A stretch of 63,901 bases of DNA, filler included, from Octopus bimaculoides (Eukaryota), in NCBI RefSeq assembly GCF_001194135.2. It is 7 parts of 7 records of this genome, joined end to end, with 100 filler letters (N's around TTAATTAATTAA, not from the genome) between each part and the next. Parts side by side here need not be neighbours in the genome. Positions count along the whole stretch, not along the records: positions 47,606 to 50,328 come from NC_069009.1; 6 more parts are not named here. One strand, written 5' to 3'. Of the stretch, positions 47,650-50,154 are shown one piece after another. Under the pieces are notes generated by a model, which saw nothing but the letters and a program-made list of their open reading frames with translations, searched no databases and was not told the origin of the DNA. The translations under genes and the position numbers were made by a program. Within the stretch, counting starts at the first letter, position 1; each line of letters begins with the position of its first letter.

Positions 47650-48248
47650 CAAACTTCTTTCAGTTTCCATCTCTCAAATCCACTCACAAGGCTTGGAAAA
47701 TAAGGTTGTAGAAGAGAATGAAATGCAAGGCATAAAATATTTTGTCTTGGGACAAACTGGCAAGATGATGCAAATCCTAATCTGTTGGATCCCCAGTCTG
47801 TGGATAGAGGAACAGCCTGTAAGATATATATAGAAGAGCTAAGCTGCAATGAATAATCTAGTAGCAGTCCCAGACAAAATCATGGGTTGCTCTGCCAGGG
47901 TCACAGTGAAATTCTGAAGCCCCCAAAAAGAGTGGAAATACCACTATTGTAGTGAATGGAAATGCAAGACAAAAAAAAAAATACTTTGTCTTTGGATTTC
48001 CTCCCACTTTGCAGAACAAATTATGCTTCTATGAATCCTGACCTGGGGAAACCCATCAATTTCACTGGCACTGTAATCGTCTATAGGACTTGAGACCAAG
48101 ACAAGAAATTAGCAATCGAAAGATATCAACCCCTTTTTTTCTCCCCCCACAAATTGGATTATCAAACAGTATATCCACCTTCTAGGACCTTGAGAGTATG
48201 CCACCATACTCTATATGCACCAGCTTTTCTCCCTTTCTGTTAAAAAAA

Positions 48249-48569
48249 CATTAGGCAAGACACACAACTCTACCTAACTCAGTCAAGCAAATCTGTAAAC
48301 CTTAGGCAAGACACATCACTCTACGTAAGTAAGCTGTAAACCTTAGGCAAGACACACAACTCGACATCCATCAGTCAACCTCTTAGACAAGACACACAAC
48401 CCTACCTAACTCAGTCAAGCAAATCTGTAAATCTTAGACAAGACACATCACTCTACCTAAGTAAGCTGTAAACCTTAGGCAAGACACACAACTCTCAGAG
48501 AAGACACTTCACGTTCCTTTAGACAAAACACTCCATTTTCCCTTCAACAAGACACTCCACTCTACTTAC
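48249..48569. repeat. Variable-length minisatellite (core cttag(g/a)caagacac(a/t)caactctac), about 8 units
   Basis: The core recurs at about 25-52 bp spacing right up to the splice donor of the Q-rich exon. Confidence 0.9.
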
Positions 48570-49637
48570 CTCAAGGTGAATGAAATGGTCGTCTTTGTTT
48601 TGATGTCCAGCCTTTGCAGCAATTTGATTCACAGCTTGCACTGGCGACTTCTGTGCATCTTTCTGCGACAAGCTGCGAACCCCTTGCACCGACTGCTGTT
48701 GTTGCTGCACTGGATTTTGCTGCTGTTGTTGTTGGTGTTGTAAAACGATGTTCTGTTGTTGTTGTTGCTGAGGGTTCACACTTCTCGCTTTAAGCTGCAG
48801 GTGCGCATTTTGTGCTTGTTGTTGTTGCTCTTGTGCCAAGTTCTGCACAGGTTGTTGCTGTTGTGCAACATTCTGTGCAGCTTGCTGCGGTTGTGCAACA
48901 TTCTGTGCAGCTTGCTGCTGTTGTGCAACATTCTGTGCAGCTTGCTGCTGTTGTGCAACATTCTCTGCAGCTTGCTGTTGCTGTTGTGCAACATTCTGTG
49001 CAGCTTGCTGCCGTTGTGCAACGTTCTGTGCAGCTTGCTGTTGTGCAACATTCTGTGCACCTTGCTGCTGCTGTTGTACCACATTCTGTGCACCTTGCTG
49101 CTGCTGTTGTACCACATTCTGTGCAGCTTGCTGCTGTTGTGCAACATTCTGTGCACCTTGCTGTTGTACCACATTCTGTGCAGCTTGTTGCTGTTGTGCA
49201 ACATTCTGTGCACCTTGCTGCTGTACCACATTCTGTGCAGCTTGCTGCTGCTGTTGTACCACATTCTGTGCAGCTTGCTGTTGTTGTGCAACATTCTGTG
49301 CACCTTGCTGCTGTTGTACCACATTCTGTGCACCTTGCTGCTGCTGTTGTGCAACATTCTGTGCTGCAGCTTGCTGTTGCACCATATTCTGTGCAGCTTG
49401 CTGCTGCTGTGCAACGTTCTGTGCACCTTGCTGCTGCTGTTGTGCAACATTCTGTGCACCTTGCTGCTGTTGTGCAACGTTCTGTGCAGCTTGCTGCTGT
49501 TGTGCAACGTTTTGTGCAGCATTCTGCATTGCAGCCTGCTGCTGTTGTGGTAGAATATTCTGTGCAGGTTGTTGTTGTTGCTGCGCATAGTTCCTGTCGA
49601 GGGCTGGGTTACCGACATCATCAGCACCACCAAGTTT
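48570..49637 (-). CDS. Internal exon (356 aa, phase 0-0) of an unidentified glutamine-rich tandem-repeat protein
   Basis: Acceptor (t)n gcttcttcccag|AAA CTT GGT at 49637 and donor CTT GAG|gtaagt at 48570; the length is 1068 nt = 356 codons with no stop. It reads KLGGADDVGNPALDRNY, then about 22 core [A/G]AQNV[A/V]Q(3-5) units, then LQLKARSVNP(Q)n...VQGVRSLSQKDAQKSPVQAVNQIAAKAGHQNKDDHFIHLE. Unit length varies in whole codons. Confidence 0.85.
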
Positions 49638-49957
49638 CTGGGAAGAAGCAAAAAAAAAAAGGAAAATAAATAATAAAAATGAAAACAAAGCAAAATAATA
49701 ATAATAATAATAAATAAGTAAAGACATGTAAATGCCCCTAAAATCTTCAATTTAAATCAATGGCCCTCAAATCGAGGCCATAAGGTGCTTCGGGGTTCAC
49801 ATAAGGTTTTCTTGCTATAATTTAGCCCTTCAACATTCAGATTACTGTGTCAAATGTAAACCTTATTATTTTGAATTGGGTCAAGTGTCTTCTACTATAG
49901 CCTCAGGCTGACCAAAACCCAACTGATCGGATTTGAGAGGCAGAAATTGAAAGAAAC

Positions 49958-49995
<38 letters not shown>

Positions 49996-49998
<3 letters not shown>

Positions 49999-50154
49999 AG
50001 GAATGGCTATGCAGTAAGTAGTTTGCTTACCAACCACATGGCTACGGGTGCAATCCCACCATGTGACACTTTAGGCAAATGTCTTCTTCTATAGCTTCAG
50101 GCTGACCAAAGCTTTGTGAGTGGATTCGGTAGACAGAAACTGGAAGAAGCCCAT

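What the first reader, a model, noticed from the sequence alone, without database searches (positions are those of the whole stretch)
48570..49637. Unidentified protein exon built from about 22-25 tandem [A/G]AQNV[A/V]Q(3-5) units
Seen: a clean, stop-free, symmetric phase 0-0 exon with canonical splice sites. Unit length varies only in whole CAG/CAA codons, and substitutions are mostly conservative (A/G, A/V, V/M). Unique flanks (KLGGADDVGNPALDRNY; KARS, VRSLS, KDDHFIHLE) bracket the array. Inference: this is not a plain polyQ tract but a roughly 10-residue periodic Q/N-rich module. It could form a coiled coil, a prion-like or phase-separating domain, or the stem of a secreted or Golgi protein, and KAR/S and R/SL might be processing sites. 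I recognise no family, so it may be lineage-specific. Because the exon is symmetric, it could be skipped without a frameshift.
Basis: partly seen in the sequence, partly recalled or inferred. Interest (0 to 1): 0.7.

Follow-up and report, generated by a model that had tools for sequence, protein, structure and literature searches.

The report
Real exon encoding glutamine-rich decapeptide array
This is a genuine, efficiently spliced and well-expressed protein-coding exon that encodes about 22 tandem copies of a glutamine-rich ten-residue unit; it has no detectable relatives, and it is an ordinary kind of lineage-specific low-complexity protein segment rather than a new kind of system.

Summary
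Window 48570..49637 (minus strand) is a 1,068-nt, phase 0-0 internal exon. It has an AG acceptor behind a long pyrimidine tract and a GAG|GTAAGT donor.

RNA-seq from several studies covers exactly this interval. More than 100 reads per raw run splice at 49637/49638 to a single upstream exon (...ELKKHREEEHKG|), and contigs splice at 48570 to a single downstream exon (|KLDIAKQKLQ...). Intron depth is 3% or less of exon depth.

The exon encodes 22 clean [A/G]AQN[V/M][A/V]Q(3-5) units, with about 4-5 decayed units at the edges. Length differences are whole CAG/CAA codons.

No family was found. Pfam and PDB sequence searches gave nothing. An exhaustive HMMER search of 1.84 billion representative proteins found only unrelated periodic arrays, and none matched the unique flanks. 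The gene itself could not be identified because the neighbouring exons lie outside the piece.

AlphaFold (single sequence) predicts long helices with moderate confidence. The segment has no Cys, no Ser/Thr in the array, no N-glycosylation sequons and no dibasic sites. That argues against a glycosylated stalk or a processed precursor.

Most likely it is a recently expanded, helix-prone Q/A-rich low-complexity spacer or self-association module. That function is inferred, not shown. Exon skipping could not be tested.

The parts
48570..49637 (-). Internal coding exon, 1,068 nt, 356 codons, phase 0-0
   Evidence: Translation. RNA depth is confined to it and spliced reads or contigs leave at both ends. 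DNA contigs cross both borders.
49638..49722 (-). 3' splice site: AG at 49639-49638, preceded by an ~85-nt T-rich tract (on the minus strand)
   Evidence: Sequence. 104-146 reads per raw run splice here.
48564..48569 (-). 5' splice site GTAAGT (exon ends ...CTTGAG)
   Evidence: Sequence. Depth steps from ~100x to 0-3x at 48570. Contigs of X9/X15/X20 continue into the downstream exon.
49569..49637 (-). Unique N-terminal flank KLGGADDVGNPALDRNYAQQQQQ (aa 1-23)
   Evidence: no database match.
49521..49568 (-). Decayed leading units PAQNILPQQQQ-AAMQN (aa 24-39)
48852..49520 (-). Core array: 22 units [A/G]A[Q/E]N[V/M][A/V]Q(3-5), aa 40-262. Unit types run AA AA GA GA AV AA GV GA AV AV GA AV GA AV GV GA, then six AA units.
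   Evidence: The 21-nt unit cores are on average 89% identical.
48693..48851 (-). Decayed trailing units and short Q runs: PVQNLAQEQQQ, QAQNAHLQLKARSVNP, Q6-NIVLQH-Q6, NPVQ5 (aa 263-315)
48570..48692 (-). Unique C-terminal tail SVQGVRSLSQKDAQKSPVQAVNQIAAKAGHQNKDDHFIHLE (aa 316-356)
   Evidence: no database match.

Best explanation
SHOWN. The interval is a constitutively included internal coding exon of a single-copy, well-expressed gene on the minus strand. The organism is probably an octopus; that rests on my memory of the flanking SINE and is unverified. The core of the exon is a coding minisatellite: a 30-nt unit duplicated about 22 times. A few unit variants (GCT/GGT at codon 1; GTT-GCA versus GTG-GTA at codons 5-6) occur in blocks and alternations, which is typical of unequal exchange or slippage. 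CAG-codon slippage inside CAA-(CAG)n-CAA runs sets each unit to 9, 10 or 11 residues. INFERRED. The product segment is about 260 residues, 59% Q+N in the core and almost uncharged. It is a helix-prone low-complexity region whose bulk properties (length, Gln density, Ala/Val stripes) matter more than exact register. It most likely acts inside the cell as an extended spacer that also gives weak multivalent self-association, of the Q-rich polar-zipper, coiled-coil-like or condensate-promoting type. This is as described for Q-rich regions of MED15, Whi3 and similar proteins. It does not look like a folded repeat domain, a peptide precursor or a glycosylated stalk.
For: Exon and splicing. Expression: about 666-706 reads per ~12 M sampled reads, roughly 50-60 reads per kb per million, in X37/X38. 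RNA runs from at least seven studies hold the exon. Array anatomy and unit variants. Single copy: DNA contig depth over the unique parts of the exon matches the adjoining introns. Helix propensity: AlphaFold2 single-sequence model has helices 24-140 and 146-283 at pLDDT 70-84, with flanks mostly <55. Composition: 42.7% Q, 18.8% A, 10.4% V, 9.3% N; only 1 R and 1 E in 223 array residues; up to 49 Q/N per 80 residues. Variable unit length (9/10/11) argues against a register-dependent fold. Literature: Q-rich segments overlapping coiled-coil motifs mediate self-association in human prion-like proteins (PMC8386614); polyQ tracts can be helical (PMC6497633); a Q-rich region tunes Whi3 condensates (PMC9060498). 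Neighbouring exon ends are also low-complexity or charged (NNNSS-ELKKHREEEHKG; KLDIAKQKLQ).
Against: No functional data. The rest of the protein is unknown, so localisation (nuclear, cytosolic, lumenal) is open. The AlphaFold model is single-sequence with pTM 0.27, and AlphaFold often draws helices for Q/A-rich low complexity. Hydrophobic periodicity is 5.06 and 10.1 residues with only secondary peaks at 3.38-3.45, so it is not a canonical heptad. Segregating coding SNPs are mostly non-synonymous: A162E, Q69H, M85T, G182A, against one doubtful synonymous site. That fits weak per-residue constraint and equally fits a merely tolerated expansion.
Confidence: 0.45

Rival explanations
1. Tolerated, functionally neutral expansion. 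A coding minisatellite grew recently inside an exon and persists only because it keeps the frame and is harmless. The array has no specific role.
For: Units are very similar at the DNA level (mean 89% over the cores, with a homogeneous block of six AA-type units), which suggests recent growth. Unit length is heterogeneous. Four non-synonymous SNPs segregate in the array, against at most one synonymous. No homologue exists anywhere.
Against: The exon is included in essentially all transcripts seen and the gene is well expressed. Distinct unit variants are about 1:1 synonymous to non-synonymous, against roughly 1:3 expected without constraint. That is only a weak hint of purifying selection, since the numbers are small and the variants are not independent.
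Confidence: 0.3
2. Involucrin-like glutamyl-donor scaffold. The dense Gln array serves as a transglutaminase substrate that is cross-linked into a structural matrix.
For: It shares its format with involucrin: short Gln-rich tandem repeats making up most of a coding segment (PMC2192633). The 223-aa core has 109 Gln and no Lys, which would suit an amine-acceptor role.
Against: There is no sequence similarity to any known substrate. There is no evidence on tissue or localisation. RNA runs from many studies hold the exon, which suggests broad rather than barrier-tissue-restricted expression, although the tissues are not known to me.
Confidence: 0.08
3. Lumenal or extracellular stalk of a Golgi or secreted protein, possibly cut at KAR/S or R/SL.
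For: The neighbouring exon ends are K/E/H-rich and coiled-coil-like, loosely like Golgi stem proteins such as GOLIM4. That comparison is from memory only.
Against: Alignment of the flanks to the recalled GOLIM4 sequence scores no better than shuffles (36 vs 34.2 +/- 4.1; 161 of 500 shuffles reach the score). The exon has no Cys, no Ser/Thr in the array, no N-x-S/T sequon among 33 Asn and no dibasic site. There are no basic residues between units, so no repeated peptide could be released.
Confidence: 0.1
4. Not protein-coding: an exon of a non-coding RNA or a UTR whose open frame is a by-product of the repeat.
For: Within the array, four of the six frames are open for most of its length, so the array's openness alone proves nothing.
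Against: Only frame 0 stays open through both unique flanks (64 codons) and the decayed units. It continues open through 12 upstream and 10 downstream codons of the neighbouring exons. Every length difference between units is a multiple of 3.
Confidence: 0.03

Closest known systems
Involucrin central repeat segment (mammals)
   Same: Short, Gln-rich tandem repeats (10 residues in the human protein, from my own knowledge) built by duplication of a short DNA unit. They fill a large part of the coding region, and the region is evolutionarily young and variable (PMC2192633).
   Different: No sequence similarity. Involucrin units are charged (E/K/H/L-rich), whereas this array is almost uncharged. 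The whole involucrin coding region sits in one exon, whereas this is an internal exon of a multi-exon gene. A transglutaminase role was not tested here.
RRBP1/p180 basic decapeptide array (vertebrates)
   Same: A tandem decapeptide array (54 units) inside a larger protein with coiled-coil parts (PMC3362647). Rotating the consensus as I recall it (NQGKKAEGAQ) gives GAQNQGKKAE, which shares GAQN with GAQNVAQQQQ.
   Different: The p180 repeats are strongly basic; this array has no Lys and a single Arg. No TM anchor or Lys-rich region could be examined. The four-residue match is within chance for Q/A/G/N-rich units.
Q/N-rich prion-like and coiled-coil-overlapping domains (MED15, CBP, FOXP2, Whi3; yeast prion domains)
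   Same: Very high Q+N, almost no charge, helix propensity and interrupted Q runs. In those proteins, self-association and condensate tuning are the documented roles (PMC8386614, PMC9060498, PMC6497633).
   Different: Those regions are irregular in sequence. This one is a strict ~30-nt coding minisatellite with an Ala/Val stripe. No aggregation or condensate data exist for it.
Disease-type polyglutamine tracts / opa (CAX) repeats
   Same: Gln runs are encoded by mixed CAG/CAA, and length changes by whole-codon slippage.
   Different: The longest pure Q run is 6, and each run is interrupted by six non-Q or mixed residues. This is unlike the long uninterrupted, expanded tracts whose amyloid nucleation was studied in PMC10624427.

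Membership tests
Any curated protein family (Pfam-A) | Score at or above the family's gathering threshold | tested here: not met
   The only hit is HC2 (PF07382) at 23.9 bits against a cut-off of 40. It is compositional.
Any protein with the same exon (orthologue or paralogue) | Alignment that covers the unique flanks as well as the array | tested here: not met
   phmmer against 1.84 billion representatives gave 70 hits, the best at 132 bits. All aligned essentially to the repeat-rich part of the query (mostly residues ~15-310), none to the unique N-flank or the C-terminal tail, and all were unrelated periodic arrays. Word-indexed searches with the flanks and with the neighbouring exon ends found nothing. 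Caveat: the organism's own proteome appears to be absent from these libraries.
Q/N-rich (prion-like) domain, Michelitsch-Weissman criterion (from my knowledge: at least 30 Q/N in 80 residues) | Q+N density | tested here: met
   Maximum 49 Q/N per 80-residue window.
Q/N-rich (prion-like) domain | Self-templating aggregation or heritable conformer | not testable with these tools
   Needs experiments (SDD-AGE, DAmFRET, a Sup35-fusion assay).
Canonical heptad coiled coil | Hydrophobic periodicity near 3.5 residues over long stretches | tested here: not met
   Periodogram peaks lie at 5.06 and 10.12 residues, with weaker peaks at 3.45 and 3.38. Power at exactly 3.5 is low. Unit lengths of 9/10/11 shift the register.
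Canonical heptad coiled coil | Long alpha-helix | tested here: inconclusive
   AlphaFold2 single-sequence model has helices 24-140 and 146-283, pLDDT 70-84, pTM 0.27.
Disease-type polyQ tract | Long uninterrupted Gln run | tested here: not met
   The longest run is 6 Q.
Repeated-peptide prohormone / polyprotein precursor | Basic (usually dibasic) cleavage sites between repeated units | tested here: not met
   No KK/KR/RK/RR anywhere in the exon. One Arg in the 223-residue array.
Repeated-peptide prohormone / polyprotein precursor | Signal peptide | not testable with these tools
   The N-terminus of the protein is outside the piece.
Mucin-like or glycosylated stalk | Ser/Thr/Pro-rich repeats or N-x-S/T sequons | tested here: not met
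   0 Ser/Thr in the array, 0 sequons, 0 Cys.
Involucrin | Sequence similarity, or being a transglutaminase substrate | not tested
   No involucrin-like hit appeared in Pfam or the representative search. The enzymology cannot be tested here.
RRBP1/p180-kinectin family | N-terminal TM anchor, Lys-rich region, basic decapeptides, long C-terminal coiled coil | tested here: not met
   The units are not basic. The other features lie outside the piece and could not be tested.

The most novel reading that the evidence does not exclude
The exon belongs to a cephalopod-restricted orphan gene. Its strictly periodic, uncharged Q/A/N/V decapeptide array is a selected functional module, for example a self-templating or condensate-scaffolding helix bundle, or a transglutaminase-cross-linked matrix protein. 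Copy number would vary among individuals and tune that function.
Probability: 0.1. Interest if true: 0.55.

Novelty: new member of a known kind. Interest (0 to 1): 0.25.

Why it matters
The practical value is for annotation. A 1-kb repeat exon like this is easily collapsed, gapped or left out of gene models. Here it is shown to be real, spliced and expressed at a substantial level, and it has coding polymorphism. If the gene proves to be lineage-restricted and the array functional, it would be a tidy natural example of a "designed-looking" periodic Q-rich helix for studying how interrupted polyQ behaves. As it stands, it is one more lineage-specific low-complexity coding repeat.

Tried and rejected
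1. Identifying the gene.
- Three word-indexed protein searches found nothing: whole exon plus neighbouring ends; unique flanks only; the exon-skipped junction peptide padded with X (two searches were rejected parameter settings).
- An exact-ORF look-up found nothing.
- Two metagenome DNA scans found nothing: a unique flank, and a degenerate two-unit pattern.
- Literature searches for the peptide, for the SINE sequence and for octopus glutamine-rich repeats found nothing.

2. GOLIM4/GPP130 idea. A resemblance recalled from memory (ELKK.H..EEEH.K.G) was no better than shuffled queries when aligned to the recalled human sequence, so I dropped it.

3. RRBP1 idea. The shared GAQN is only four residues and the charge character is opposite. 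I kept it as an analogy of format, not as homology.

4. Top HMMER hits (P0001, P0002, P0005, P0057, P0068 and others). I inspected them. They are unrelated 5- to 11-residue periodic arrays in unrelated proteins.

5. RNA genes. Rfam and tRNA scans of the piece gave only sub-threshold noise.

6. Long reads. None were available, whether PacBio or Nanopore, so array copy-number variation and full-length isoforms could not be examined.

8. Variants at 48723, 48727 and 48735. They lie in the stretch 48717-48770, where reads from other polyQ genes cross-map (spurious joints), so I do not rely on them.

Full report
**What is there**

On the minus strand, window 48570..49637 translates without a stop into 356 residues. 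The other five frames of the interval each carry 2-5 stops.

The interval has canonical splice signals. Upstream there is a T-rich tract of about 85 nt ending ...CTTCTTCCCAG|AAACTTGG. Downstream the donor reads CTTGAG|GTAAGTAGAG.

**Is it an exon?**

Yes. Three raw RNA-seq runs (X36-X38) and contigs of several older RNA runs were laid on the piece.
- Depth is about 80-150x from 48570 to 49637. It is 0-3x in the downstream intron and below 1x in the upstream intron next to the acceptor.
- At 49638, 129, 104 and 146 reads (X36, X37, X38) leave the genome into one and the same sequence, with 98-99% agreement. In frame it reads ...ELKKHREEEHKG before the exon's KLGGADD. Three X37 reads extend this to ...NNNSS-ELKK... 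(table 5c; my translation).
- At 48570, contigs of X9, X15 and X20 continue into one sequence that reads KLDIAKQKLQ in frame.
- A 194-nt unspliced contig at about 1% of the exon's depth is the pre-mRNA.
- Neither neighbouring exon lies within the piece. The introns are therefore longer than about 690 nt (upstream) and 960 nt (downstream).
- Genomic DNA contigs of three runs cross both borders uninterrupted. The structure is therefore genomic, and its depth is that of a single-copy locus.
- The raw libraries are unstranded. The strand follows from GT-AG and from the only consistently open frame.
- Reads on the exon amount to roughly 50-60 per kb per million sampled reads in X37 and X38. RNA runs from at least seven studies hold the exon.

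**Anatomy of the array**

TRF reports period 30, 23.2 copies, over 48822..49527. Parsed by codon:
- Residues 40-262 are 22 units of the form [A/G]-A-[Q/E]-N-[V/M]-[A/V]-Q(3-5), with 9, 10 or 11 residues each.
- Decayed units precede the core (PAQNILPQQQQ, AAMQN) and follow it (PVQNLAQEQQQ, QAQNAH..., Q6NIVLQHQ6, NPVQ5).
- The flanks are unique: an N-terminal KLGGADDVGNPALDRNYAQQQQQ and a 41-residue C-terminal tail.
- Length differences sit in the Q runs. The three commonest forms, in 13 of the 22 units, are CAA-(CAG)1-3-CAA, so they reflect CAG-codon slippage.
- The six-codon cores come in a few variants: GCT or GGT at codon 1, and GTT-GCA or the linked pair GTG-GTA at codons 5-6.
- These variants are arranged as an alternating GA/AV middle part and a homogeneous block of six AA units at the 3' end. 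Mean core identity is 89%.
- This is the signature of a coding minisatellite that grew by repeated local duplication.
- The open frame inside the array is not independent evidence of coding, because four of the six frames are open across most of it. The unique flanks and the neighbouring exons fix the frame.

**Variation**

Several coding SNPs segregate.
- 49153 G/T gives A162E. T is found in most RNA runs, in X1 and in X22; the window's G is found in X5.
- 49431 C/A gives Q69H.
- 49384 A/G gives M85T. It is at about 46% in X38, absent in X37, and present in X9.
- 49093 C/G gives G182A.
- Allele fractions in X37 and X38 look like ordinary heterozygous or homozygous states.
- No indel and no novel unit junction appears in any run. 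Short reads, however, cannot count units, and no long-read run could be listed.
- Four non-synonymous changes against at most one doubtful synonymous change suggest weak constraint on individual residues.

**What is it related to?**

Nothing detectable.
- Pfam gives one sub-threshold compositional hit. PDB sequences give none.
- An exhaustive phmmer search of 1.84 billion representative proteins returns 70 hits, the best at 132 bits. Every one aligns only to the repeat-rich part of the query and none to the unique flanks. On inspection they are unrelated 5- to 11-residue periodic arrays in unrelated proteins.
- Searches with the unique flanks and with the neighbouring-exon ends find no protein sharing even a few five-residue words. 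The gene, or the organism's whole proteome, is therefore not in these libraries.
- For that reason "lineage-specific" remains probable but unproven.
- The flanking SINE copies and the AT-rich microsatellites look to me like an octopus genome. That is memory, not a test.

**How it probably works**

The core is 49% Q, 23% A, 13% V and 10% N, with one Arg and one Glu in 223 residues. The whole exon has no Cys, no N-x-S/T sequon and no dibasic site, and the array has no Ser or Thr. Three consequences follow.
- These features argue against a glycosylated or disulfide-bonded extracellular stalk.
- They also argue against a precursor that releases repeated peptides. KAR/S and R/SL are single sites of no recognised type.
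- A remembered likeness of the neighbouring residues to GOLIM4 did not exceed shuffled controls.

AlphaFold2 without an alignment draws two long helices (24-140 and 146-283) at pLDDT 70-84, with mostly low-confidence flanks and pTM 0.27. Hydrophobicity is periodic at 5.06 and 10.1 residues, with weaker peaks at 3.38-3.45 and little power at 3.5. Units of 9, 10 and 11 residues keep shifting the register. A classical heptad coiled coil is therefore not indicated.

A helix-prone Q/A-rich low-complexity rod is the reading that fits best. Q density (49 per 80 residues) meets the usual Q/N-rich criterion, while the longest pure Q run is only 6. That is unlike the long expanded tracts studied in PMC10624427.

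By analogy with Q-rich regions that overlap coiled-coil motifs (PMC8386614), with helical polyQ (PMC6497633) and with the Whi3 Q-rich region (PMC9060498), I take the most likely role to be an extended spacer with weak multivalent self-association. I put this at about 0.45. The main rival, at about 0.3, is that the array is merely a tolerated recent expansion. An involucrin-like transglutaminase substrate (format analogy, PMC2192633) and a lumenal stalk are minor rivals.

**Verdict**

The secretory and processing ideas are not supported, and skipping is untested.

This is a new member of a well-known kind, a lineage-specific low-complexity tandem-repeat coding segment. It is of modest interest unless the full-length protein or experiments show a specific role.

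Noticed in passing
window 48246-48569 (minus strand; first ~320 nt of the downstream intron): The intron begins inside a minisatellite. A motif like (TTAG)GTAGAGTG(A/T)TGTGTCTTG(C/T)CTAAGG recurs about 9-10 times, starting at the real donor GAG|GTAAGTAGAGTGGAGTGTCTTG (TRF periods 24, 41 and 132). Several copies carry donor-like TTAG|GTAGAG. RNA depth there is only 0-3x, so these decoys are not noticeably used.
   Followed up: partly
window 49842-49950 (+), 49997-50154 (+), 47650-47694 (-): Three copies or fragments of one short interspersed element, each abutting a microsatellite ((AT)n, (CA)n, (ATAA)n). The two + copies are 78% identical over the whole alignment, with the conserved part in the 3' ~80 nt. 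RNA depth over them is hundreds to thousands, because reads from many genomic copies pile up. ARAGORN and Rfam find no tRNA in them.
   Followed up: partly
window 49153 and 49431: The window carries the minority allele at two coding sites (A162 and Q69). Most RNA and several DNA runs have E162 (G>T) and H69 (C>A). X37 carries both alleles at each site and X38 is almost entirely the alternative allele.
   Followed up: yes
window 48727: Low-level T>C (A>G in the mRNA, which would be Q304R) in 4-6% of X37 and X38 reads. This is the direction expected for A-to-I editing. It lies in the CAA/CAG stretch 48717-48770, where reads of other polyQ genes cross-map, so it is unreliable.
   Followed up: partly
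window 49640-49722 (minus strand): An unusually long (~85 nt), almost pure T/A-rich tract with (ATT)n precedes the acceptor. It attracts cross-mapping low-complexity reads and spurious 'opposite strand' joints with the CAA/CAG stretch.
   Followed up: no
window 49528 (run X22): DNA run X22 shows loose ends with a palindromic GATCGATC-containing sequence. This suggests a proximity-ligation (Hi-C-type) library rather than anything biological at this locus.
   Followed up: no
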